This document shows positions 23,042 through 41,549 of a stretch of DNA of 64,000 nt, piece after piece. The stretch is from Asterias rubens (lineage: Eukaryota), in assembly GCF_902459465.1 (NCBI RefSeq), contig NC_047065.1, positions 744,001 to 808,000 of the forward strand. Reading direction: 5' to 3'. Position 1 is the stretch's first letter. Every line of letters starts with the position of its first letter. A program made the translations under genes and the position numbers. Under the pieces are notes generated by a model. It had not been told where the DNA came from. It searched no databases and saw nothing but the letters and a program-made list of their open reading frames with translations.

Positions 23042-26000
23042 CTATGATTTCTGAACTCTAGTTCTTTCAAACTGAACGGCAAAGTCCACATTTGCTTCAG
23101 CAATCTTCTTCATCTCCTCATCCAGACCCTTAGACGTCTTCAGATCCTGATGATTGAAAAAAGAAAAACATGCAATTTAAAAAGAGGACGACATGTACCT
23201 ACGGAAGCCCAATCAAAACAAGCACAAAATCCATGCACAAATGTTTCACCAATAGACCCAATTCACCCAACGTCATCATCAGAATTATCTTAGATGCGCC
23301 ATACAGGTGGACAATGTCATTGTGCGTTATTCAGTGAAGTGCGCATTTTAGGCGACGCATAAACCTATTGCCCACCAACATGGTGAACGGGCACAGTCGC
23401 CGCGTGTGACGTGCGCACAAAGGGTCAATAATTGGCCTTTTATCAACATGCTGCCACGCCCAAGATTCAAGGTCTAGTTCCAGCTGACACACCCAGATTT
23501 TACGATGTTGGTGTTTTGGTCTCTTACTCAGCTTGCGATCGACATGGGCAGGTGCATCCATCAAGAGCCATCTTATACATTTGTTTTTCCAGCTTAGTAG
23601 TTCTTTAGTGTTTCCATAAATTTGGACACTAAAATAACTTTTGAACTGAGAAGTCTCCTGAATTCCGAAAAATCTACTCAGCGGTATCAGCATACAAAGC
23701 AAGAAAAGTTTTTAAAAGAACATAATGCACTCGGCAAGTACACATCAGAGCTTTCAACATTTGCATCTTGCAATCAGGGAGATTTTGTATACCAATCAGG
23801 GGGATGTTTAGAACTACATCCAACATAATCAGGGAGACTTTTAAATTAGGGAGAGTACGCAGCTCTGGCACATGGTGTTACCGAAAAACCAATAACAGGG
23901 TGCCCTCGAGTAGCTTCTCTGGGTTGACCCCGCGGTGCTCACTCTGACGAGCCCCTGACAAGAGCTAATTGAACGATCACTCACCCTCTCATGGTGATTT
24001 CATGCACCTCCGGCCAGCCCCAAGTGACCCACTCCACAAGCAGGGCACTTCGGGCTGTACCGGGGCAGATCAGGTTAGACCCGGGGAAGCTAATCGAACG
24101 CACCCATACAAATCAAACATTTGTACACATACCTTGACATAAAGCTCAGCCATTTTATAGAGTCTCTCAATACAAGCTTTGTAGCATTCACTCCCTTTCT
24201 TGATCCCTCGCCCGACAACCGTCTCTTTCACAATTGCCCTCAGTTTCTGTAAAAAAAAAGATACCATGACAAAAATCAAACAGTGGCTCTTGCAAACTGC
24301 TAAGAACCCTCCTTGGACGGATTACACAGATGCGCTGTGATCAAGCAAAATGAGTGGTTTGTCGACCCATGTCATTTTGTTGTTGTTGATACATTTGAAA
24401 CAGCATACACTATGTTAATACATAGTTTTACCTTCTTTGGTCCAAAGTTAAAGTTTATTTATCAAGAGATACGAGAGAACGATACTAATAAAAAGGAGTT
24501 TGAAGTTGAGTTGTTCATTGAGCATACATCGTCATGTTTTGTTTTCAATGCTTATTTTAACCCCTTTTTGATGTTGCAAATTTACACATATTTCTTGTAT
24601 TTGTAAAAAAACAGGAAACTGCCTTACATACAAAACTTTTGTACAGTATTACTAGCTTACTATGGCACTAAATAATAAAAAATCATAAACCTGCTTGAAA
24701 ACTGTAAGCCCACTTACCATCCTTGTCCTCTCTGAGCGTGAAACCTTTCTGACGTTACCGCTTGAAGACGATGTGAAGGTCTCCTGGATCTTCTTCTCTG
24801 TTAAGGGCTGGTCTTCTGACGTCTCCTGCGCAGTAAGCTTCTTCCGCGGCGACACCCTCGTTGGCAACATCTCTGTAGGCTTCTTACGGGGTGACGTTCT
24901 TGTTGGCATAATTCTACACAAATTAAAAGCGATACAAAGACATCTTTAAAAAACAAGATCCAATTTCCAGAGCACCCAATGTTTGAATTTGTTACGCTCT
25001 GACGCTCATCATAGTACAAAAATGTAATAATCATAGACGACAAATTTTAGGTACACGAAGAAAAATTCACTTCAGTGAAACTTTTCCCTAAGAGCTTCAG
25101 GTTTATGTTGCAGTAAAATATTCCTTCCGTAAAATATTGCTCGAGTATAGTTTGTATTGCCATGACAAATTGCTACTGCTTGTTATCCGAGTGGGAATGT
25201 ATAAATAAATGAATGAATAACAGAAAGCTGAATCATATGCACCTTCTCTTAGCTGCTAGGACAGACGTCATGTCTGGTCTCTGCCTCTTTACACCTCGGC
25301 CATGTAGACGTCCTGGGCTTATCTTACTCCCCTTATCTAGCACCAGTCTACGTTGCTTCTCAGCTGACCTCTGACCCTTCTCAGCCGACCTCTGACCTCT
25401 TGAGTTAAGCCTCAGATGAACCTTCCCCTTTTTGGTAGCAGAAGAGGGATCTGGAGGGATGGTGAGCGTTGCTGGAGATGCTGCCTGCTCGGAGGAACAC
25501 GTTGATGCCGTCTCAAAGCGGATGTAGCGCTGCTGCATCTTGGAGAAATGACGATCGACCTGCATAGACTTGCGAGAGTCTAAACAATACCTGAGGAACA
25601 AAACGAAAACAAACAAATCTGATGTTTGAATTGAACTCTAATGGAAATGTGATAATCTTACCCTACTCAGCTTGCTTTGTGTCTAAGGCTGTTTTAATTC
25701 CCATCACAAGAAGGGGATAATGCAGCCCTTTCAAAAGAAAACAAACTCTTAAGTTCTTCATTTTTGTTGTTAAAAACAAAACAAACAAAATAGTCATGAC
25801 ATATCCACAAAATGTCCCAAAATCTTGAACTTTTCTGGCAAATGGCAGAGTGCAACCATCTGATGTTAGTTCAGATGTTAGTTTCATTTTGAACATCTAC
25901 GTACATTTTTATAGAATAAAATAACAAAACACTCACAAAACCAAAGATATGTTTGCCTTTCTTTGGAAGACTTTCCACTTACAGGATTCCTGGTGAGCTG

Positions 26001-29200: not shown

Positions 29201-32200
29201 ATGATTTGTTTCTTTTCAGGGATCTTCCTGTAGAATCAGGGAGAGTTTTGCAGCTCTGCAACACAATTCACTACGGGTAATACTGACAACTCAACTTAAG
29301 ATGAATCTTAGTGCTTTGTGAAATCAAGCCACTGCTCACCTATGAACTTCTTTAATGCTTCAGCTTGGATGAGTTCTACTTCCTCCAGTAAAGATTGTAG
29401 TTTTGCTCCGTCTAAACTTGGAATTTTACTGAGTGTTGCTCTTGCATTTTCACAGTCTGAAAAATACAACAAATACAATTAAATATCAACAATTTGAGTA
29501 ATTATAATAATAGTAAAACATTCCTATATGCACATGCATATTACCTTGAGGTCCTTATGCGCTGTCGGTATTTTCCTACAAGGTATGTGTGGAGCTACAT
29601 GTTGAAGTATGAAACCTATTCCTTTACATTGTGCCATGGCTTACAAGATGCTGTGGCGTAATATGCTGCCAATCAAACCAGGAATACCGGGGCGAACCCC
29701 TTCTCTTAACGATCAGTGCACAGGCTTTTTATTCTGCATTCACAACACTCGGGTTGCTATACGTCCCATCCGAAAGGAAGGACGAAGTAATAATGGTTAA
29801 GTGTCCCATCATTCTAATACACATTTAAATTGACTGGTAATCAAGAACACATACCATCAAATGGCAGCACATCCTGGTACTCTGCTAGCTTAGCATGTAT
29901 AGCTCCTCTCAGGTCATGCGGTGAGTTCATTACTTGAGCAGTAACTACATCGTTACCAAGGTTGCCCCCGAGGTCGCCCCCGCCCACGAGGAGGTAGAAG
30001 AATTCCTGAGTTTCCTGCATGCTCAGGTCTGGTACTAAAATGAGATAAGACCGAGAATGGAAGTTAGAGAAACATTTGCTCAAACCAAATAAATCTCATC
30101 CAAAACTGATGGGGTGCGTCTTGGCGGTCGTGACCAAGGACTGTTTGGGTTAAATTGGTTAATCACTGGCCAATGACCGAAACGGTTGTTGGTTCTGACC
30201 GGCAAAACGCACCCCTGGCATGGGATGATGAGCTTGTACAAGTTCTTCTTCAGGATGTAGTGATGCATGATGGGACTGATTGCACTGCTGGTTGGAGCCC
30301 AATTTCATGGCTCTACTACTGTAAGCAAAGAATCAGCGCTTCAGAAGCAGGACATTCCACGCTTATGTCAAGCGTATTTCAGGGTTAGCAGGGAGTTTGT
30401 GCTTGTGAGTGTGTGTTATACTCAACATTACCAGACATTTTTCGCCGTCGTCAAAGACCAGTTAGAAGTTTTCTTGATTGTCTTATCTGCGCAACTACAG
30501 TTCCATCTAAACTTGGGGTCACATGGCATTCATTAAAATCAGTAAGTAACAAATTTAAAAAACACGTAAAATTCAAAAACACGTCAAATAAAGAAAATCT
30601 TCTTTAAAATCACCTGATAAGTCACCCGAATTATTTTTGACGTGTTCTTTCCATTCTTTGGTGCTGAGCAGCTTGGCATGTTGAGTTGAGGCTCTTGGGG
30701 TCAACGTCCTACAGGGTAGTCTCATAATAACAGCCATGTCGTTGGATCGACCTATCGACGACAGCCACTCAAGATAATGTTGAGATCTAGGAAGTCTGCT
30801 TCCTGGTAAAAGACGGCTGCATTCAAGATTAAGGAAATACAATCAGGCCTGATATGGGCTCTGGCTTGGGCTTTGGCTTGGGGCTCCGTCATCCATTTTG
30901 GAGCAGTGTACATTGGCTCGGTGTTCCCAACAACACATGGAGCCCGGAGAGACGGAGCCTGAGCCTAGGTTGGAAAAAGCCTGTAGTAGACTAATGACCT
31001 CACTTAATTACGAGAGGCCAGCTTAAATCTTTAACTTTACTGAACTGTAATAAGTGTGTCGGGTGGGTGGTGTAAAAAAGATGACGGTTTTCGTCCTACT
31101 ACCATTCAGCGCAGGACAACAAACGCAAACTTGTATTTGTTTACCCTATTATAATGAATTTTGACATCATGACCTCCATAGAGAACTTATAAAGGATACA
31201 GTGACAGAGTGGTTGGCGAGAGGTACATGCAGGGAACATCAGCTCTCTGGACTGAACATACAACCTGTAGCTGTTTGGAGAATGCCACAATCTGTGGATG
31301 AATAAAAGGTATGAGAAATGGATCCAAACTTTCACATTAAAGTAAACATTCTTTGTCCAGCAACATAAAAACATGAATTTGTATTCTTTTTTTGAACAAG
31401 GTCTGGAAGGGCACATCTTTTTTTTATGACAGTTTTTTTTTATTTTTGCCTTCCCTTGACGGCCTCTGCTTGCTATAAAGAATTATTGTCTTGTTAGAAG
31501 AATTAAAATAAATAAAATCACTAAAGTTGCCTTTCCTGTGCGGATTTTGTTTTTTCACAGTTTGTGCCATCAAAGAAACTCCTGAGTGTCTCATAAAAGT
31601 TTTGCACGTTGTGTTCTCCAAAGTGAACATAAACAAAAATAATATACTTTCCCCTTAAAGTTTGAATAATATATTTAGTACAAAGTACAAAGTTTGAGAA
31701 TCGTTTTTTCGATCAGTTACCTTCTTTGTCTGATGAGGTTTTGTTGACTTGGGTTTTGGCGATTTAGAACCTGCACTCTCCTCCACATACTCAACATTAA
31801 CCTTTGACCTCTCGCTGAGGAGAGGACTCAAAGAAAATCCAGGAAGACAGACCGACTTCTGCCCCTAAAGAGAAAATAAAAACAAAGATCTCACTGAGTA
31901 AGAACATGAAAATCAGTCGTCCATATTTGCTGTTAAATTCTTAACCAAGTGAGGCTTGTTCATAAGAAATTGTGAACTGTTATCAATATTTGCTGAAAGT
32001 TTCTCACAATTTTTTACAACAGCTCTCCATTGCTCATACCAAGTAATTTTTTATGCCAACAATTAACTTGAGAAATTACCAATAGTGTCCAGTGCCTTTG
32101 AGATGTTCAATTTAGACAGTCCAATTTGAGACTTTTTAATACTTTTTAAGGATCCCCAGAAACCCTAGATAATTACCTTTCCATCAGCTACCAAAACCTC

Positions 32201-34635
32201 TCCCTTCCATGCCATGTCACCCAGCACCACCTCATCCACTGAATCCAGCCCAACCACTCTCCCATGAAGATGGTTCACCCATGTATTCAGGGTACTGTCT
32301 TGGGGTCTGTCCACCGTTGCGTCATCAAGCACCACTGTCAGAACACCATCATGCCATGAGCAGAGGCGTTGTAAGGCTCCATAGAGTGTGATATGATCAT
32401 TTATTGATACATCAGTGTTAGGTGACGCTAGCCAGAGGATGTCCAGGTAGTGTCCGGTACTAGGAAGCTTGTCAGCGAGGGCATGGATGAACTCAGCCAT
32501 TGCTGCGTCCAACTCACTATGAAGGATAATAAACAAATCATGGTTTATTTATTTCATCAGTATTGATTAAAAAGACATTTGCAGTAAACAAGATTGACTT
32601 ATACTCTCTAATGTACAAATGTAGTTAATACGATAAAAAGCAGACAACATTAAAATGAACATTTGGAACAAACTCCCAAGATCCAAGATAAAAGGGCAAA
32701 TGACCCAGAATTACACAAAAAGACAAACTTATCACAGTTCTGTCCCTAACCAGATCAGGAAAACATGGCACAATTAAAACAACAATGGAAGGGCACTAAC
32801 GCATTTTCTTCTTGATAAAGGGAATGAAGGGAACCTCTATCTAAGGAAGAAGTAAATTTTCAGCAGCATCCAGGCAGTGAACAGGAGCAAACGTGAAGTA
32901 TCAGGCATGACTACTCGATCCATGCAAACTGCTTCTGGCAACTTTGTTTATTATTTTAAAAAATAAATCATGAATAATAGTATTTACTTGGCGTTAACTT
33001 CTTGGTTTTCAAAGACTTCATCATCTCCAATAGAAGTGTCTCCACGGCTAGTCGAACTCCTGCTACCCTTCTTATTGGTCGATCCCCTATCCAGTTGATT
33101 CAGCAACAGCCAATCAGCATCCACGCTTTGATCTCTGTGTTTCAGACATGATGATTGGTCGACAACAGCAACATAATACTTCCTCTGTGGGATGAAGCTA
33201 TGCTCTGCTGTATTTTGAGAGAAGAAAATTGCATTAATCATCTTTTGAGAAGTTTGTAAAAAAATGTTCCATAAAAAGAAATGTGAATAATACCGGAGTC
33301 TTATTAATCACACGTAGCTACAAACAAACTACTTAAGGCACTTGAACAAACAGGAACATTTTTAAGACAAGTTCTTGAAATCTTTTTGAATAATGACACA
33401 GATTCATGCAACACATTTGAAGGATTAAGGACTTACTACAAGGTGCTGCGGAGCATTCAGCAGCCAGTGCCAGAACCAGAGGGACCTCTTAGGATTCTTA
33501 ATGATAAGTGTAACTGGGTTATTCTTTATGCATACAACGCACAGGGCCTATTAAAAGGACGAAGCAATATTGATGAAGTGTCTTGCTCAAGGACACAACT
33601 CACAAGTGTCTAGTCTTCAGAACTCCAATCCACACTCTGCCGATCAGAAACACCAGAGCTTGAGACCTGTGCCCTGACCACTCAGCTTTTTGTTACTGAA
33701 CAAAAATACGGACCTAGAAATAAAACTAATGTTACATTTACAATGTCATTTTTATGAATGACTCCAAAATAAAGGCATTCTCTTATATAACATTTTATTT
33801 CAAGTAGTAACTTCTCAGTAAACTTTTAGTAATTTTACCTTTGTTACTTTGTGAGGTGATATTTGCGGCAATCTTTCGCTGAAAAGTTTTTAAATCTTCT
33901 TTGTCGGTGTCTGAAGGAGAAAAAATTACACAACAAACTTTTATTATAATAATTAATATGATAATGGAGGTATATCAGTTCGAAATACACTATGTAATTT
34001 GATTTTGATGAAACTGACCCATAATTTTGGATCCTGATTTATTGAGGAACTGATGAATGATGTACATTGACCCACTGGATGCGTTCGTTTAGCTTCCCCG
34101 GGTCGACCCCGGTGTGTGGCGTGTTTTTTTCCAGGACGAACGTGTTTAGATAATTACCCACGTTTGTCCTGGGAAAAAAACCGCCACAACCGGGGTCGAC
34201 TGGGGAAGCTAAACGAACGCACCCATTGAAGATTGTAATGTAATGTATGTCGATCAACAATGACACTGACTGTATTCCACAAGCAAAAAACAACCTCCTT
34301 ACCTCTCGGTCGGGAAAGCACATTTTTATCATAAATTGATTGTTTACACTTACATTACAAAATACAGAAAAAGTTACTAAAAACAATAAAGTCAATAAAT
34401 ATAGAATACATTTTTACAAAATTACAACACTCTTTCATTCAGTGTTTCATTATTTTTTATAGTTACGATTTCTACATATATTGGCAGTTTGATTTTACTC
34501 TAAATCTCTGATAACAAAAAAAAGCATCTATTACATACCATGATTCTTTCCAAGAGAAATTAAGAGAAGAAATCTCTCAGAATGTGAACAAACATCTCCA
34601 AATTTCGAATAACAGCGGGCCTTTTCAGCAGTCAT
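23042..34635 (-). CDS. MTBP: MDM2-binding protein (MTBP, Sld7-like replication initiation factor), ~870 aa
   Basis: Phase-consistent exons 34635-34539, 33910-33839, 33207-32988, 32516-32177, 31864-31721, 31291-31200, 30816-30614, 30034-29855, 29456-29340, 29150-28980, 26196-25983, 25590-25243, 24913-24718, 24246-24133, 23146-23042 (2613 nt). Motifs match human MTBP as recalled: ERFLLLI, LADKLPS.GH..LDIL, EWKEHV..SVPD, PGILYCLD..RYIRFET.STC, C.ERLY...YVKDLKTSKGL.EEMKK.A..N. Confidence 0.92.
26205..26270. repeat. (AAT)n microsatellite, ~22 units
   Basis: Seen directly; one AAC interruption; lies between an MTBP splice acceptor and the retrotransposon. Confidence 0.95.
26271..27521 (+). mobile_element. 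5'-truncated R4-clade (Dong/Rex6-like) non-LTR retrotransposon with restriction-like endonuclease
   Basis: ORF 26346-27458 has the end of the RT region (IKAINTWAVSLMRYSAG), a CCHC knuckle (CRMC..ETVFHIVSEC) and an RLE domain (RHD..ILWDF.IQTD..RRPDVV..LIDIAVP..EK.EKYQDL). Upstream EYIRRVKKCLKSKLNGG is offset by +1 in a G7 run. Short 3' UTR with a GGCTAC/GTAGCC hairpin. Confidence 0.9.
27522..27831. other. Assembly gap (310 N)
   Basis: Run of N. Confidence 1.
27832..28160 (-). mobile_element. tRNA-derived SINE with CORE-like segment
   Basis: Reverse B box gggattcgaaccc near 28082; minus strand gtgtccctcagcaagatatttaac; homologous to 38452-38720. Confidence 0.75.
30817..31199 (-). other. U12-type (minor spliceosome) GT-AG intron in MTBP
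   Basis: 5' splice site GTATCCTTT (31199-31191); branch site TTTCCTTAAT (30837-30828) about 12 nt before the CAG. Needed to avoid an in-frame TAA, and phases match. Confidence 0.85.
34076..34224. mobile_element. Palindromic MITE (GG.TGCGTTCG termini)
   Basis: Arms ggatgcgttcgtttagcttcccc / ggggaagctaaacgaacgcaccc; related pieces near 24070-24105 and 30108-30215. Confidence 0.8.
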
Positions 34636-34736
34636 TCTGCTGGAGCGCGCCACTGAAGTTGTATACCGCCCTCTTTTGATATATAAATGTCAATCCTGTG
34701 ACGTCATTTCGGTCTCTTTTCACGCCGACCCCGAAA
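34636..34736. promoter_or_regulatory. Bidirectional core promoter MTBP/RPL14
   Basis: Central ATATATAAAT (34679-34688); TGACGTCA (34699-34706); TCT/5'TOP tract TCTCTTTTC (34713-34721) on +; Inr-like TCAGT on - with A at 34654. Confidence 0.75.
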
Positions 34737-37481
34737 ATGGTAAAGCATGGCGGACGAATTGTCCTTAAATTCATAAGATTATGAGTTTTATAACTGCCAA
34801 AATTCACCAATTCCATAAAGAATAACCACTTACGCAACTATGACACTTACTGTGTGCTTAGATTTGTGTGTTGAGTTGATTACGTGTTATGTTTTGACAA
34901 CTTTAAATGGTACAATCAATTTTGCAATTTCTTGCGTGGCAATGCTATTCAATTTTTCTGCCCAGTTTCCGGACGTGTGTTTGCATTGCATTAACTGGAA
35001 TTGTACTTAAAACTTGCCCATCAAGTTTTTCTTTTTAAATTAAATTTCACTTCAGTATTTTGGAAAAGTTTCCGTATGGCGCCACCACTTTTTCATTCGA
35101 TATGAAATAATATAGTATCTAATTTACCTCAATGATATATCCCTTTTTGTAAAAATGAGTGACAGGTATCTTAACTTCAAAATAGAAAAAATACTGGATA
35201 ACTTTCCGTATGGTGAGGTGGTGGCGCCATACGGAAAGTTATCCAGTATTTTTTCTATTTTGAAGTTAAGATAGAGTGTAAATGATCTGGGCCAAAAATC
35301 TGGGCTCTGCTTGGAGCAGGGAATTCCGCGCTCGCGGCTCTGCGCTTGCGAATTGCACGGTCAGCAGAGAATAGTGATCGTAAAGACGTAAGTGCTTGCT
35401 TAGCCTAACCTTAGCGCAGACCATGAAATTGGGCCCAGATGAAACAAGGAAGTGTCTTAAAAAAAGTGTTGTTTATCAATATTAATCATAATAATTCAAG
35501 ATCAAGAATGATGTTGAAAATTAAATGTATCACTTTAGTATTTTATTTTAATTAAATTGAATTGTTTGGTTTGACCAGTTAAATTCTTAAAATCCGAATA
35601 GGAATACCACTTGATTTTGGCATAAGGGATATTGTAATTTGCTGATTCTGTTTTGTTTCTCAGGTATTCGAACGCTTTGTTGAGATCGGCCGTGTGGCCT
35701 TTATGGCCGTCGGTAAAAACAGGGGAAAGCTATGCGCCATCGTTGATGTCATCGATCAGAAGAGGGTATGTTGTTTAGGAAGGTTCCTTCGATCAACGAT
35801 CCAACTATTAACCACCACTTTTAAAGAGATTTATTTTATGTTTTTAACTTAGTTGGACTGTATATTTCCCTTATAAAATATTCCTCTTGAGGAATTGGTT
35901 GCTGAAACGCAAAATTTGGAAAAGGAAGCTCATACTACATCCCACGGACGGAACTCTCTCTTGCACTCATGCCAAAAAGAACTATAAATGAAGTGTAGCG
36001 AGCAACAATGTAAGACCCACATATAAATGTAGACCCGAAAATCAGTTTCTATTTAAAGAAAGAGTGATGTTTAATTTCTTCTCTCTTTCATATGAATCAT
36101 TGGCTCAAACATTTAACTGCTTTAAATTTAGAATTCAAACAAAAATCTTCTGCAGTATTTGGAAAATATCTTTGCCGCGGGGAACAAAAGAAAGAAGTTT
36201 CACGTTTTCATTTGTTTTCTTTTTGTTCTGAAACCAGGCTCTTGTCGACGGCCCATGCAGTGACTTCCCTCGTCAGCAGATCAGACTGAAGAAGCTTCAT
36301 CTGACCACCTTCAAGATCCGTATCCCTCACTCCGCTCGCACTGCTACCGTCCGCAAGGCATGGGAGAAGGCAGACATCCAGAAGAAGTGGCTGGGGACAA
36401 CATGGGCCAAGAAGTTGGCTGCCAAGAAGAGGGTGAGTAAGCTGTTGGGTTTAGGTCGCCCCTCAATCCTGATAATTCACGTAGGGCGATTCTTGTCATT
36501 GCCTTGGTGCCCTTGAAATCCTCAAGTACAATTAACAATTTCCTCAAAGGGTGCCATTTACCAAGGAGAAAATGCCTTGGTGCCCTACTGCCCTTGCAAA
36601 AATGAAGCATACAGGTCTGCCACCTTCTTAGAAACTTGGTGAATTTGATTTGCATCCGACATACAAAGACATGCAGACAAATCAAATTCAACCTCAAGTC
36701 AATCTTTAAATTCAAACATAACTGCATTTTAAAGTCAACCTGAAAAATGACACGAATTGAGATAAATATTGTTGTTGATTTTACATCAATGCATTGGTTG
36801 AACACAATTGATTTTTAGTTCTTCACAGCTCCAATGCTTGCATAAATTTGAATGTTTTATGAAAAGACTAAACTGTAGAGCGTCTTTCAACCCAAATGTT
36901 CTGTTGTTAATTTTCAGAGAGCCGACATGAACGACTTTGATCGCTACAAGCTCATGAGAGCCAAGCAAAAGGTATGCAGTTTATTCTTATTCCTACAAAA
37001 AAGATTTCTACCTTTTCTTTAAGTAAGATTTGTAAAATTTGAATAGTGAAATACCTCAATTTTATTAAAAGTTTTTTTAGCTGTACATGTTGGGTAATCG
37101 TTCCAACCAACTTCTACAAAAAAAGTTGGTATTTTCCACTGGTCCAACTAAAAAAGTTGTTTTTCCGGAGTCCATTTTTCAGTCTTGGTGCAATCTCACA
37201 TCATCATTTGCTAGGCTTTGATATTCGCTACCCGTTTCTGTCGTCGTTGCCTAATCAGTCCAGTCTTTAAAATCCAGTGTACATTATTTGCTTATAAACA
37301 TGCTCCCTACTCAAAATGTTTGAACACTAGCTCCTTGTTCACTAGAGTAGCAGAAAAAAAAAAAAAAAATCCTATTGTTAACATCCCGCTCCAATTTTTT
37401 TTCTTGCAGAGGACAAGAATCATCAACACCGAGGTGAACAAGATGAAGAAGGCGAAGAGAGCGGCAGCAAAAGCCGAATAA
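34737..37481 (+). CDS. RPL14: 60S ribosomal protein L14 (eL14), 141 aa
   Basis: Exons 34737-34739 (ATG only), 35664-35765, 36238-36432, 36918-36971, 37410-37481: [36 protein letters not shown]....[23 protein letters not shown] at 37717. Confidence 0.97.
35062..35244. mobile_element. MITE (GGAWAA.TTTCCGTATGGCGCCACCAC termini) with an internal inverted duplication
   Basis: TIRs ggaaaagtttccgtatggcgccaccac / gtggtggcgccatacggaaagttatcc; AGTATTTT on both sides (8-bp TSD-like); in RPL14 intron 1. Confidence 0.8.
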
Positions 37482-37571
37482 ACTTCCTCCTGTCCTCTTA
37501 AGACGTCTTAGTGACCAAGATGGGTCTCCACAGTCTCGTAAAACTGTCTAATTGGCATTGACACAACCATA

Positions 37572-37662
37572 AAAACTGCTTTGTAATATGATCACATATT
37601 AAAACTGCTTTGTAATATGATCACATATTAAAACTGCTTTGTAATATGATCACATATTAAAA
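37572..37662. repeat. ~28-bp tandem repeat x3 in the RPL14 3' UTR
   Basis: aaaactgctttgtaatatgatcacatatt repeated. Confidence 0.9.
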
Positions 37663-38451
37663 CCTCATACTTGTAAAATTGCCTGGCCCCTTTACTGGCC
37701 GTTTGGTTAGAGAAGGAATAAAATGAACATGGTGAAGAAATCAATTGTTTGTAGTACAAATATGTGGTCTCTTGTATTTAATGGTTTATTTATGTTTAAG
37801 TAGGATCTGGTTTTCTTTAAAGTTCTCACATCCCGTAGTTTTGAAGTTAACAAATCTCTTGGGAACTGTTGCTAAAATTATGGGGAAACTTTTTCCTTAG
37901 AAACAATAAGTTCCAATTTAAATTGACTTGGGGAACAGTTCTGGTTGGACAAATCAAATGGACTGAATACAAATGAACTTGCATTGTTTGGGGGTGGGGA
38001 GGATGGCATTGGGTATTTCAGAGGATAGAATAAGCTTTTCTTTAAGACGATACTACAATGAGGAACTAAAGTACTTCACTGAGGAACTTAAGGACGCCAG
38101 GCACAGTGACAACCAGACATTTTGATTTGGGGGATAAGCCGGGGCAACGACATATTTTGGAATTGGGGCTATTTAATTTAACAAGTCAATTTATGTACGT
38201 TTTGTTCAATTTTTTAATTATCCTATATAAGGCGTCGGGTGCATGACAAGAGTTAGTAGACTCATACTTCTCATATTGGAAGAAATTACATGCAATTGGC
38301 TATGACACAACTTGGGAGAATATATAGTAAACGGAACCTTTCTTTTGTGCAAGTTATCTATCTCATTTGGGGCTTTTAATGTATAGCGAATTACAGTACA
38401 TCTCAAAAGATGCCGGATGAGTTGGTTTAACTGTTGTACAAATAAGGTGTC

Positions 38452-38720
38452 ACGGCCGAGTGGTTAAGAGCACTGAATTCAATTTTCTGGCGGTTTAGTT
38501 ATTTGAGTGTGGGTTTGAATCCTGGTCATGGCACTGGTGTCCTTGAGCAAGATGCTTTACTACAATTGCTTCTCTTCACCCAGGGGTATACTGCGAGGGT
38601 AGAGGTTGATATTGTGTATGAAAAAGCCACTAGCGCCATACAGCAGCTCAGGGCTGTATACTCCACAGGGAGCTGAAAAACATTAAAGGAATGTTATCGG
38701 CCCAATGACCAGGACACTAA
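38452..38720 (+). mobile_element. tRNA-derived SINE with CORE-like segment
   Basis: A box gccgagtggttaag, B box ggtttgaatcc, gtgtccttgagcaagatgctttac; related pieces near 33600-33690 and 40500-40560. Confidence 0.75.
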
Positions 38721-38792
38721 TTACTATTATTTATACACAACCGACTGGGAAAGAAATTACAACACAGTACCAAACCATGAAATTATTATGAA

Positions 38793-41549
38793 TTAGCTTA
38801 CTACATCAACCACACAGTCACTGTCTATGCATTCAGAGTCTGGATCCACACTTGGTATCGTCAGCCCTGCATCCTCAGTCCTCTTCAAGACAAACACAAC
38901 ATCTTGCAAGACGTAGAAAGGGTTCTCTGTGTCGCCCTCGCAAAGGTAAGGCAACTTGGTAAATGTCTGTACAGTAAATCCAGCGGGTAAGAAGAAATCC
39001 TTGGTAGCGCTCAGGACCTGTTCCTCCCATGTCTTGCCTTGGATGTGAAGAATTTCTTCTGGGTCATTCTGATTGCTACCTATGTGAACACACATTGGAG
39101 AGAAGCTCCGTTAAAGAAAAAGGCTAGCATAAAAACATCCTTTTCCTCTGGCAACTCACACCTGTTATCTCAATTTAAATTCCTTTTTGAAACAGTGGAT
39201 TAAACTGGATCATGCACGAATCAGTTGGGCTGCTGACAAGTAATTCAATGTACCACACCCACTTGTTGAAAGGATGTAAACTCTCAGAGTTCATGTGGCC
39301 AAATTAATTTGGAAATTCTTTACAGGGTTGGGGAACTTTTTGAAGACAGGGAAAGAAGCCACTGAGCCATTCGATCCCAAATGATACTTCCTCTATAATA
39401 AACTTCAAAATCTGATGAACAACATCTTTTCTTTTGAAAATATTTGTCTCAGCAAACCTTTACCTGTTTCTACAAATGGTTTGAATGGAAGAACGAGCGC
39501 CACAATAGTCACTCCGCCGGGTACCAGTGACCTATGGATATCGTGCATGATGGAAGCTGGTTTCTCACACCTATCCAATAGATTCAAGCAACTGATGGCA
39601 TCATATTTGGGACCAGCCCATTCCTCAATGCCAAGAACTCTGATAAAATAAATCAAGAGGAAAGGAAATTGTCGTTTGACATAAGCAAAAAGTGCATAGC
39701 TTTTTAGAAATACATCCCAGAGGATGCAACTGGCACCCCATTCACTTTTCGCTAAGCAAAGAAATTTGCTAAGCAGTATTTTCTGCTAAACAGCTTTATG
39801 AAATTGGGCCAGGGAGAAACCAAATCAATAATCCAAGATTAACTTAGGCACCCCCCCCCCCAAAAAAAAAGGTTTAGCGTCCCCGCCCGCTTCCTTTTTT
39901 TCTTCTTCTTTAAAAAAGAAAAGAAAAAGAGATTCAAATTGTGAAAAAAAATCCAAGCCGGTTGTCTTTAAAAATGTGTCAGGCGACCATTATAATTCAT
40001 TTTTTAAAGGCCCTCTTCCTTCCTTTTTTCAAAATGGCAGGATGCTAAACATGTTGGTTTTTGTTTTGGCCTTAAATAGAAAAGATTACCGTACGTGTAT
40101 CCACGCTGCCTCAATCTCCTCTGCATCATATAAGACACTTCTGTTGCCGAAACCTTCATGAAGTGACCGGCCATCATCTCCGTCACTCGGCCATCTCCGG
40201 CTCCAAGGTCAAGAAGATGGTCAGCCTTGAAGTCCTCTTTGATCTGAAGGAGTGAGTTGAACTGCTTAGTGGAGAAGACAAACATACTGCCTCTCTGAAG
40301 AAGTCTTTGTGGATAAAAATAAAACTCTTAAAAGTTTGCTGCTTTGAATAAGTCTTTATCCTTTAATCAGCACATAAATATACACTTAAATAAAACTAAC
40401 CTGTGAACATTTGTGGAGTCAAAAACATGGTCTACAATGAAGCAGACCGTGTTCTGTAATGAAGTTAAACAAAAACCAACACAAATTTCAAGGGATGTTT
40501 AAGTTTGGGTTAAATCCCGGTCATGACACTTGTGTCCTTGAGCCAACAATTAAAGGCACTTAACCATTATTGTTTCGTAAAACACCGGAGAGGAAGAGCA
40601 TTTTGCTGTATCAGCCAGGATCCTAGTGGATAACACCCATGACTCCCCCTACTTTAGTCTGTGAAAGGAGTGACCCTGTTTCAGCCACAGTAGGTGGCAG
40701 CGTGCCCCTGGTGGCAGTTGATTTGGGTCTAGAGCCCAAATCAGTTCAGTTTAGCCTTCACTAACAGCCTGTTTGCTTCAAGTTTGAAAGGGGCAAGGGC
40801 ACCAAGGCATGTTCTCCTTGGTAAAGGGCACCCTATGAGGAAGTTGTAAATTTCTACTGTAGCATTTTAAGGGCACCAAGGGAATGACCGGGGGCACAGA
40901 GGCAATTGCCATTTAAAAAAACAATCCTATCCGATTCCTGTCTTCTTGAGCTTCTTACCCATTGATTGAAGTAGCCGACATTAAGATCCCCAGGAAGGTT
41001 TTGACTAAGCTGTGCAAGGCTTGAGTGATTATCCAATCAGATTTCTCATAGCTTAGATCCAAGAATTGTTCCGTAGCTTCATCCATGTTGCACTGACAGA
41101 ACAAAGCTCTTGACTCTTCAGGAAAGCTCTGCAAGTTACAGTTGTACCACTTTGCAAAAACAGATAAATGCAAAGAAAAATATTTCACTCTGAAGTTGAT
41201 CGCAGAAGAAATGGTTAACTAAGGATTAACACTGGACCACCAACGATAACTTTTTTCTGCTTGACCACAAACCTCATTCACTTGATTTCCCAAACCTCAC
41301 CCGACCCCCTCCCCCACAAAAAAAGTAAAATTTTGTGTAGCTATCACCTCAAATCAAAACCTCGCCTTCTAATTATCCTAAGGACCTTCTGAGGAGAAAT
41401 TAAAAAAACAAGACAATAAAGTCATAAAAACTTGAACTTACTTTATCTACGTCATAATGTCGTCGGATCGCTTGCCTGTTGAACTTGGTGTTAGTCTGAT
41501 GCTCATAGGCTAGCCGCATCATGCTGTTACGTATACGTGGGCGAGACAT
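38793..41549 (-). CDS. METTL9: METTL9 (DREV1) protein-histidine N-methyltransferase, ~323 aa
   Basis: Exons 41549-41442, 41149-40959, 40304-40095, 39639-39464, 39079-38793 (972 nt): WYNC..TSINGLLQRGSMFVFS..LLDLGAGDG.VT..YDAISCLNLLDRC..LVLPF.PFVE..WEEQV..FTKLPYLCEGD..FYVL.D.VFVLK. Probable non-coding exon 1 ends at donor 42174. Confidence 0.95.

What the first reader, a model, noticed from the sequence alone, without database searches (positions are those of the whole stretch)
34633..34741. Ultra-compact bidirectional promoter: one TATA element apparently serving RPL14 and MTBP
The ATGs are about 100 bp apart (34635 on -, 34737 on +). The central ATATATAAAT reads TATATAAA on +, about 32-34 nt before a TCT/5'TOP start (34714-34716). 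It reads TATATAT on -, 31 nt before an Inr-like TCA+1GT (34654). A palindromic CRE (TGACGTCA) lies between TATA and TCT. A very highly expressed ribosomal-protein gene and a normally low, cell-cycle-linked replication factor would thus share one core with two initiator types. Footprints of the two pre-initiation complexes would overlap, suggesting mutually exclusive firing.
Basis: partly seen in the sequence, partly recalled or inferred. Interest (0 to 1): 0.7.

Follow-up and report, generated by a model that had tools for sequence, protein, structure and literature searches.

The report
Compact RPL14–MTBP two-way promoter, sea star
In the starfish Asterias rubens a ribosomal-protein gene (RPL14) and a DNA-replication gene (MTBP) point away from each other and share about 65-100 bases of promoter; the pairing is conserved in four starfish, but the central TATA box is found only in Asterias, so it is an ordinary compact two-way promoter and not a proven case of one TATA serving both genes.

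Summary
The window is Asterias rubens. RPL14 runs on + (ATG 34737) and MTBP on - (ATG 34635), with 101 bp between the ATGs.

Spliced RNA contigs carry the MTBP mRNA up to 34657 and the RPL14 mRNA back to 34723. No contig covers the 65 bp between them, so the promoter really is very compact and no upstream MTBP start was seen.

The head-to-head pair is kept in A. amurensis, Patiria miniata and Acanthaster planci. In all four species the conserved parts are:
- a GC box,
- a spacer of 27-29 bp,
- the CRE,
- the TCT start motif with the RPL14 leader.

The TATA box is present only in the two Asterias species. Patiria and Acanthaster have a non-TATA sequence at that spot. The Inr proposed for MTBP is already altered in A. 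amurensis and has a 9% chance expectation.

My reading is a conserved bidirectional promoter to which a lineage-specific TATA was added, most plausibly helping RPL14. TATA plus TOP is known in about 35% of mammalian RP genes. A TATA shared by both directions fits the geometry but has no positive support (about 0.2). No start site is mapped to the nucleotide. Interest is modest.

The parts
34539..34657 (-). MTBP exon 1 as seen in RNA: a 5' UTR of at least 22 nt, ATG at 34635-34633, donor after 34539
   Evidence: X25 contig record 15 lies on 34539-34657 with 0 mismatches and ends there. The translation equals P0024.
34652..34657 (-). Inr-like TTCAGT (A at 34654)
   Evidence: Perfect BBCABW. It reads TTAAGT in A. 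amurensis. Chance of a match at 28-34 nt is 9%.
34646..34652 (-). E2F-like TGGCGCG in the MTBP leader
   Evidence: One of only 2 matches to the relaxed pattern in 64 kb. The matching place in Acanthaster holds a perfect TTTCGCGC and in Patiria TTTTGCGC. The E2F reading is a consensus match only.
34663..34677 (.). Conserved block ATACCGCCCTCT holding the GC box (GGGCGG on -, 34666-34671). It lies at -50/-45 from C34716 and -14/-9 from 34657.
   Evidence: Invariant core in four starfish. GGGCGG occurs only 6 times in the window. Positions.
34679..34689 (.). TATA element: TATATAAA and TATAAATG on +, TATATAT on -
   Evidence: Present in both Asterias species and absent in Patiria and Acanthaster.
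34699..34706 (.). Palindromic CRE TGACGTCA. It lies at -17/-10 from C34716 and -49/-42 from 34657.
   Evidence: 2 in the window against 0.48 expected. Invariant in four species.
34713..34721 (+). TCT / 5'TOP initiator of RPL14 (candidate C+1 at 34714 or 34716)
   Evidence: Consensus matches. CGGTCTC(T)TTTC is conserved in four species. The start itself is not mapped.
34723..34739 (+). Part of RPL14 exon 1 present in RNA contigs, ending in ATG 34737-34739
   Evidence: Contigs from X3 and X25 carry 16 letters matching 34723-34738 spliced onto exon 2 (table 7).
35664..35765 (+). RPL14 exon 2
   Evidence: Contig pieces and the GT..AG joint 35764>36237. Translation.
36238..36432 (+). RPL14 exon 3 (L14e domain)
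   Evidence: Pfam PF01929, 73 bits. Joints.
33839..33910 (-). MTBP exon 2 (72 nt)
   Evidence: A 72-nt gap in the record coordinates of the X25 contig, plus depth in bins 33683-34056. Exact match to P0024.
32988..33207 (-). MTBP exon 3
   Evidence: Contig pieces and translation.
32177..32516 (-). MTBP exon 4 (MTBP_N domain)
   Evidence: PF14918, 46.8 bits. 100% identical to P0024.

Best explanation
This is a compact, evolutionarily conserved bidirectional promoter of Asterias rubens. It drives RPL14 to the right and MTBP to the left from a spacer of no more than about 65 bp that is absent from the RNA.

The working parts are the ones conserved across starfish. They are arranged almost symmetrically.
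- A GC box sits about 45-50 nt upstream of the RPL14 start, and only about 10-14 nt upstream of the MTBP RNA 5' end.
- A 27-29 bp A/T-rich spacer follows.
- A palindromic CRE sits about 42-49 nt upstream of the MTBP RNA 5' end, and only 10-17 nt upstream of the RPL14 TCT.
- The TCT/TOP initiator and the conserved RPL14 leader follow.
Each gene's proximal activator site therefore lies inside the other gene's core region.

MTBP most likely starts from a TATA-independent, GC-box plus E2F-like core of the kind common in proliferation genes.

The TATA box is a change specific to the Asterias lineage in the central spacer. If it is functional, it most plausibly strengthens or focuses RPL14 initiation, because the + strand reads as two perfect TATAWAWR matches and the upstream T of TATAAA is 32 nt before C34714.

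Shown here: the gene models, the RNA 5' bounds, the conservation pattern and the motif positions. Inferred: which factors bind, which direction the TATA serves, and the exact start sites.
For: - Gene models and species.
- RNA: spliced contigs end at 34657 (MTBP, X25, 0 mismatches) and at 34723 (RPL14, X3 and X25). The depth of bin 34618-34804 in X25 (5.0) is fully accounted for by the pieces 34618-34657 and 34751-34804, so nothing spans 34658-34750.
- Synteny: METTL9/DREV, then RPL14, then MTBP head to head in A. amurensis, Patiria and Acanthaster. Spacers between ATGs are 98, 143 and 113 bp.
- Alignment A1: the GC-box block, CRE, TCT and leader are invariant. The GC-box-to-CRE spacer is 27/27/27/29 nt. 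The TATA is present only in Asterias.
- BLASTN of the window against Patiria: block 34663-34764 is the strongest alignable non-coding stretch between exons (E 5e-14). Besides it there is only a borderline 28-nt intron-1 block and a misplaced repeat match.
- E2F-like sites next to the GC box on the MTBP side. MTBP expression rises with MYC or E2F1 in mammals (PMC9219613).
- TATA plus a polypyrimidine initiator is known: 35% of mammalian RP promoters have a good TATA, with upstream Sp1 sites common (PMC554972).
- Divergent gene pairs are usually TATA-less (PMC2670823). In yeast bidirectional promoters a TATA is mostly on one side only (PMC12159744).
Against: - No start site is mapped to the nucleotide. 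All RNA evidence is from assembled contigs, which give only bounds.
- The geometry also fits TATA use toward MTBP. The upstream T at 34685 is 28 nt from the contig end 34657 and 31 nt from the Inr A at 34654, within the -32 to -28 window (PMC5580651).
- TBP can bind a TATA in both orientations (PMC1885649), and no BRE that would set orientation was found on either side of the TATA (my own reading of the sequence, not a tool result).
- Whether the TATA was gained in Asterias or lost in Valvatida is unknown, because both TATA-less species belong to one order.
- In Drosophila, TCT promoters use TRF2, not TBP (PMC4102762; PMC5580651). The TATA may therefore do nothing for RPL14 either.
- The E2F and Sp/KLF assignments rest on consensus matches only.
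Confidence: 0.6

Rival explanations
1. One reading: in Asterias the single quasi-palindromic TATA nucleates pre-initiation complexes in both orientations. One uses the TCT (RPL14) and the other the Inr (MTBP). Because their footprints overlap, the two genes fire in alternation.
For: - TATATAT on - has its upstream T 31 nt from a perfect BBCABW Inr and 28 nt from the MTBP RNA contig end. TATAAA on + is 32 nt before C34714.
- The RNA 5' bounds are only 65 bp apart.
- TBP binds a TATA in both orientations (PMC1885649).
- No BRE biases the orientation (my own reading of the sequence, not a tool result).
Against: - Patiria and Acanthaster keep the same two-way promoter without any TATA.
- The Inr CA is lost in A. 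amurensis although the TATA is kept.
- An Inr at 28-34 nt is expected by chance 9% of the time.
- The - strand reading TATATATC is only 7/8 of TATAWAWR, whereas + has two perfect matches.
- The MTBP contig begins 3 nt upstream of the proposed A+1.
- Nothing here bears on mutual exclusivity.
Confidence: 0.2
2. The TATA is functionally neutral. It is a chance product of drift in an A/T-rich, length-constrained spacer. Both genes use TATA-independent cores: TCT with a TRF2-type system for RPL14, and GC box with an E2F-like site for MTBP.
For: - The spacer sequence is free to vary among starfish while its length is kept at 27-29 nt.
- Ciona RP promoters lack typical TATA boxes (PMC4691747).
- Drosophila TCT promoters use TRF2, which does not bind a TATA (PMC5580651).
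- The two Asterias species are so close that they count as one observation.
Against: - A TATAWAWR on the correct strand at the correct distance from the TCT is expected only about 0.2% of the time from window background. My own rough estimate for a 70% A/T spacer is under 2%.
- Two overlapping perfect matches are present.
- Mammalian RP promoters often have conserved TATA boxes (PMC554972).
Confidence: 0.13
3. The main MTBP promoter lies elsewhere, for example inside RPL14 intron 1 near the conserved ETS plus octamer block at 34959-34986. The 34657 contig end would then be an assembly truncation.
For: - A conserved non-coding block exists in RPL14 intron 1.
- The MTBP contigs have low depth, and contig ends are only bounds.
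- X25 has a low-depth contig at 34751-34915.
Against: - The X25 MTBP contig ends at 34657 with no unaligned leader, and no contig covers 34658-34750.
- The low-depth intronic contig is equally expected from abundant RPL14 pre-mRNA.
- The annotated ATG and N-terminus are conserved in Patiria and Acanthaster directly next to the shared spacer.
Confidence: 0.05

Closest known systems
Mammalian ribosomal-protein promoters with a TATA box plus polypyrimidine (TOP/TCT) initiator (Perry 2005, PMC554972)
   Same: An RP gene with a short first exon ending at the ATG. The initiator is of the (Y)2C+1TY(T)2(Y)3 type, with a TATA about 25-32 nt upstream and a GC/Sp1-type site about 50 nt upstream. CREB/ATF sites are listed for some RP genes.
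   Different: Here the whole promoter is shared with a divergent gene within about 65 bp. The TATA is not conserved among starfish orders, whereas mammalian TATA quality is 82% conserved between human and mouse. The CRE sits between the TATA and the start.
TATA-less bidirectional promoters of housekeeping or proliferation genes, such as Surf1/Surf2 and DHFR/Rep-1 (reviewed in PMC2670823)
   Same: Head-to-head genes under 1 kb apart with shared GC-box-type elements and conserved pairing. In Patiria and Acanthaster the promoter is TATA-less, as is usual for this class.
   Different: There is no CpG island (CpG o/e 0.53-0.61). One partner is a TCT/TOP gene. The Asterias version carries a canonical TATA in the centre.
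Bidirectional initiation from symmetric A/T-rich elements, based on TBP binding a TATA in either orientation (discussed for Giardia in PMC1885649)
   Same: A near-palindromic TATATA element lies about 30 nt from plausible starts on both strands.
   Different: Function in both directions is not shown here. Metazoan core promoters are described as acting unidirectionally with strict rules (PMC5580651).
Dual-initiation promoters with intertwined YR and TCT/TOP starts (Nepal et al. 2020, PMC6954239; abstract only was read)
   Same: Canonical and polypyrimidine initiators occur in one promoter region.
   Different: Those are on the same strand and serve one gene. Here the two initiator types are on opposite strands and serve two genes.

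Membership tests
Bidirectional (head-to-head) promoter | Two genes on opposite strands, transcribed away from each other | tested here: met
   RPL14 on + and MTBP on -.
Bidirectional (head-to-head) promoter | Start sites less than 1 kb apart and both genes transcribed | tested here: met
   Spliced RNA contigs of both genes have 5' ends at 34657 and 34723, 65 bp apart, with nothing between. These are bounds, not mapped starts.
Bidirectional (head-to-head) promoter | Pairing conserved in relatives | tested here: met
   A. amurensis, Patiria miniata and Acanthaster planci keep it. Two non-asteroid MTBP loci have no RPL14 neighbour.
TCT / 5'TOP ribosomal-protein core promoter | YYC+1TTTYY or YC+1TYTYY motif in an RP gene promoter | tested here: met
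   CTCTTTTC at 34714-34721 and TCTCTTT at 34713-34719, conserved in four species. Consensus from PMC5580651.
TCT / 5'TOP ribosomal-protein core promoter | Transcription starts at the C of the motif | tested here: inconclusive
   RPL14 contigs in two runs begin at 34723, 7-9 nt downstream of the candidate C. Contigs cannot show a true 5' end.
TCT / 5'TOP ribosomal-protein core promoter | TRF2-dependent, TBP-independent initiation (as in Drosophila) | not testable with these tools
   Needs ChIP or depletion experiments.
TATA-box core promoter | TATAWAWR with the upstream T at -32 to -28 from the start | tested here: inconclusive
   Toward RPL14: T34682 is -32 from C34714 and -34 from C34716. Toward MTBP: T34685 is -28 from 34657 and -31 from 34654, but the - strand is only 7/8 of the consensus. 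The starts themselves are unmapped.
TATA-box core promoter | Element conserved in orthologous promoters | tested here: not met
   Present in A. rubens and A. amurensis only. Patiria and Acanthaster have GGTCAAAAGTT at the aligned place.
Initiator (Inr) | BBCA+1BW at the start site | tested here: inconclusive
   TTCAGT is perfect in A. rubens and TTAAGT in A. amurensis. The RNA contig extends 3 nt further upstream. Chance level is 9%.
cAMP-response element (CRE) | Full palindrome TGACGTCA near the promoter | tested here: met
   34699-34706; 2 in 64 kb against 0.48 expected; invariant in four species. CREB/ATF binding is not testable here.
E2F-regulated cell-cycle promoter | TTTSSCGC close to the start site | tested here: inconclusive
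   Perfect in Acanthaster (TTTCGCGC), 7/8 in Patiria and about 6/8 in Asterias (TGGCGCGC). No binding or expression data.

The most novel reading that the evidence does not exclude
In the Asterias lineage, a few point changes turned the central spacer of an old TATA-less bidirectional promoter into a near-palindromic TATA. TBP can load on it in either orientation. The orientation of a single TBP-DNA complex would then decide, molecule by molecule, whether the TCT (RPL14) or the Inr (MTBP) fires. That would be a natural, recently evolved case of one TATA feeding two initiator types.
Probability: 0.18. Interest if true: 0.6.

Novelty: new member of a known kind. Interest (0 to 1): 0.3.

Why it matters
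Compact bidirectional promoters and TATA-plus-TOP ribosomal promoters are both well known, so the locus itself is not surprising.

What it offers is a tidy natural comparison. The same roughly 100-bp two-way promoter has identical flanking elements (GC box, CRE, TCT) and the same spacer length in four starfish. It exists with a canonical TATA in Asterias and without one in Patiria and Acanthaster.

Patiria embryos are, to my knowledge, an established reporter system. Swapping about 12 bp between the two versions would therefore test directly what a centrally placed TATA does to each direction of a shared core promoter.

Tried and rejected
- Nucleotide-level start sites were not obtainable. Both run searches returned only runs kept as assembled contigs, so one search gives 5' bounds only. 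I do not use contig depth to rank expression.
- Search for more starfish promoters:
  - A scan of metagenome contigs with the conserved CRE-TCT pattern found nothing.
  - The protein databases hold MTBP from only four starfish.
  - A. rubens and one A. amurensis isoform were not retrievable as loci; isoform X1 was.
- Wider synteny:
  - P0004 has a gene range too long to fetch.
  - P0010 is not on record.
  - P0008 and P0016 are transcript-like contigs without context.
- Rfam found nothing in 30000-40000.
- The scan's own notes held nothing further.
- A survey of TATA use in other A. rubens ribosomal-protein promoters was considered and dropped. First exons are too short to locate without annotation or reads.
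- I looked for BRE elements flanking the TATA by eye and saw none on either side. A YY1-like site after the RPL14 ATG is imperfect and only partly conserved, so I make no claim for it.
- I did not type the 141-aa RPL14 protein into a search, because there is no reference for a spliced product. RPL14-based homologue searches were therefore not run.

Full report
**What is there**

- ATG on the - strand at 34635.
- ATG on the + strand at 34737, followed directly by a GTAAAG donor.
- TATATAAA at 34680-34687, overlapping TATAAATG at 34682-34689. It reads TATATAT on - from 34685.
- The full palindromic CRE TGACGTCA at 34699-34706.
- CTCTTTTC at 34714-34721.
- TTCAGT on - with its A at 34654.

**Genes and organism**

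The genome is 417.6 Mb.

RPL14:
- Pfam L14e hits 36268-36444 on +.
- With the splice joints seen in RNA contigs, RPL14 has these exons: 34737-34739 (coding part of exon 1), 35664-35765, 36238-36432, 36918-36971, and 37410 onward.
- This model encodes 141 aa.

MTBP:
- MTBP_N hits 32174-32518 and MTBP_C hits 25419-25595, both on -.
- The first four MTBP exons are 34635-34539 (coding part), 33910-33839, 33207-32988 and 32516-32177.
- They translate to exactly the first 243 residues of the RefSeq "mdm2-binding protein-like [Asterias rubens]" protein P0024.

So the window is Asterias rubens, and ATG 34635 is the annotated start. The N-terminal extension before the conserved SER(F/Y) motif is shared with Patiria and Acanthaster MTBP, which supports that start codon.

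**RNA evidence (assembled contigs only)**

MTBP:
- Run X25 is from the same species label as the DNA holders and shows 0 mismatches. Its spliced contigs show that it contains cDNA.
- It holds a 2987-nt MTBP contig whose last piece lies on 34539-34657 and ends the record there, with no unaligned leader.
- Contigs of a close relative (X2, X3) end a little further in.

RPL14:
- Contigs in X3 and X25 carry 16 letters matching 34723-34738 joined to exon 2.

The spacer:
- The X25 depth of bin 34618-34804 (5.0) is fully explained by the pieces 34618-34657 and 34751-34804.
- No contig therefore crosses 34658-34750.

The two mRNAs thus begin at or outside 34657 and 34723, at most 65 bp apart.

Contigs cannot give true ends. 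The RPL14 contigs stop 7-9 nt short of the candidate TCT cytosines. The MTBP contig reaches 3 nt beyond the proposed Inr A. Both observations fit the proposed starts loosely and prove neither.

**Chance**

- TATATAAA occurs 4 times in the window against 3.2 expected. A TATAWAWR falls in 5.8% of 101-bp stretches.
- One on the correct strand 28-34 nt before the TCT is expected about 0.2% of the time.
- The CRE is rare: 2 against 0.48 expected, or 0.3% of 101-bp stretches.
- GGGCGG occurs 6 times in the window.
- A BBCABW Inr lies 28-34 nt from any arbitrary point 9% of the time.

**Comparison with relatives**

MTBP exon 4 found Patiria miniata MTBP (68% identity). Through it I reached Acanthaster planci and Asterias amurensis.

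Their loci all show METTL9/DREV, then RPL14, then MTBP head to head. The spacers between ATGs are:

| Species | Spacer between ATGs |
|---|---|
| A. rubens | 101 bp |
| A. amurensis | 98 bp |
| Acanthaster planci | 113 bp |
| Patiria miniata | 143 bp |

Asterias belongs to Forcipulatida. The other two genera belong to Valvatida. By my own knowledge this split is on the order of 200 million years old.

Two non-asteroid MTBP loci (assemblies GCA_029531755.1 and GCA_927797965.1) have no RPL14 neighbour. The pairing is therefore not general to animals.

The four-species alignment shows three invariant blocks:
- ATACCGCCCTCT, which holds the GC box.
- GTGACGTCA-YY-TCGGTCTC(T)TTTC followed by GCCGACCC, which is the CRE, the TCT and the RPL14 leader.
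- ATGGTAAAGC.

The distance from the GC box to the CRE is 27, 27, 27 and 29 nt. By BLASTN, 34663-34764 is the strongest alignable non-coding block between A. rubens and Patiria in this region. The other non-coding matches are a borderline 28-nt block in RPL14 intron 1 and a repeat that aligns to a non-matching place.

The TATA is not part of the conserved set. Where Asterias has GATATATAAATG, both valvatidans have GGTCAAAAGTTG or a close variant. The MTBP leader also varies.

In A. amurensis the Inr reads TTAAGT, and 3 nt are missing from the leader.

Next to the GC box on the MTBP side there are E2F-like sequences:
- A perfect TTTCGCGC in Acanthaster.
- TTTTGCGC in Patiria.
- TGGCGCGC in Asterias.

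They fit MTBP's known induction by MYC and E2F1 in mammals (PMC9219613).

**How it most likely works**

The conserved architecture is nearly symmetric (positions).
- The GC box lies at -50/-45 from the TCT and -14/-9 from the MTBP RNA end.
- The CRE lies at -49/-42 from the MTBP RNA end and -17/-10 from the TCT.

Each gene's proximal activator site therefore sits inside the other gene's core region, around an A/T-rich spacer of fixed length. This promoter works in Patiria and Acanthaster without a TATA, as is usual for divergent pairs (PMC2670823).

The Asterias TATA is therefore an addition or a lineage difference, not the basis of bidirectionality. If it is functional, I think it mainly serves RPL14, for three reasons.
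- The + strand carries two perfect consensus matches.
- The TATAAA upstream T is 32 nt before C34714.
- TATA plus a polypyrimidine initiator with an upstream Sp1-type site is the known architecture of about a third of mammalian RP genes (PMC554972).

Against this, Ciona RP promoters lack a TATA (PMC4691747), and fly TCT promoters use TRF2 (PMC5580651). A neutral TATA is thus a real rival.

The idea is not excluded for Asterias.
- The geometry fits both directions within the accepted -32 to -28 window.
- TBP can bind in either orientation (PMC1885649).
- I saw no BRE on either side when reading the sequence by eye.

Its only positive evidence is geometry that is 9% likely by chance on the MTBP side. 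The comparative data show that the TATA is dispensable for the arrangement. Steric overlap of two pre-initiation complexes on 65 bp or less is a fair inference. Mutual exclusivity was not testable.

**Verdict**

This is a new member of a known kind. Its main value is as a natural TATA-plus versus TATA-minus pair of otherwise matching two-way promoters that could be swapped in starfish embryo reporters.

Noticed in passing
window 34959-34986 (RPL14 intron 1); L004 9607-9634: A 28-nt block is conserved between Asterias and Patiria. It holds an ETS-type core (TTCCGG) followed by an octamer-like ATTTGCAT (GTTTGCAT in Asterias). It lies about 245 nt into RPL14 intron 1 and about 300 nt upstream of MTBP, and may be a shared intronic regulatory element.
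   Followed up: partly
window 35167-35273 and 34073-34228: There are two hairpin-shaped inverted repeats: 47-nt arms at 100% in RPL14 intron 1, and 55-nt arms at 73% in MTBP intron 1. The neighbouring stretches (34057-34243, 35062-35162) and three others (32000-32186, 33496-33682, 36488-36674) show very high summed contig depth and many repeat-to-repeat joints in the RNA runs. These look like MITE or SINE-like interspersed repeats.
   Followed up: partly
window 34740-34756: The first 17 nt of RPL14 intron 1 (GTAAAGCATGGCGGACG) are largely conserved in four starfish and contain a YY1-like ATGGCGG core. Downstream YY1 sites are typical of mammalian RP genes, but the match here is imperfect and weaker in Valvatida.
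   Followed up: no
window 39405-39656 (-); L004 1-3799, L005 1-3033, L006 1724-5101: A DREV/METTL9-type methyltransferase gene lies just beyond RPL14 in all four starfish, so the three-gene order METTL9, RPL14, MTBP is conserved.
   Followed up: partly
window 34639-34641 and 34655; L006 9985-10000: Between A. rubens and A. amurensis the MTBP leader differs by a 3-nt indel and by the G-to-T change (+ strand) that removes the Inr CA. The TATA, CRE and TCT are identical.
   Followed up: yes
(run tables): RPL14-sized fractions of this stretch turn up in seawater and marine plankton metatranscriptomes. This fits starfish larvae or shed cells in plankton samples.
   Followed up: no
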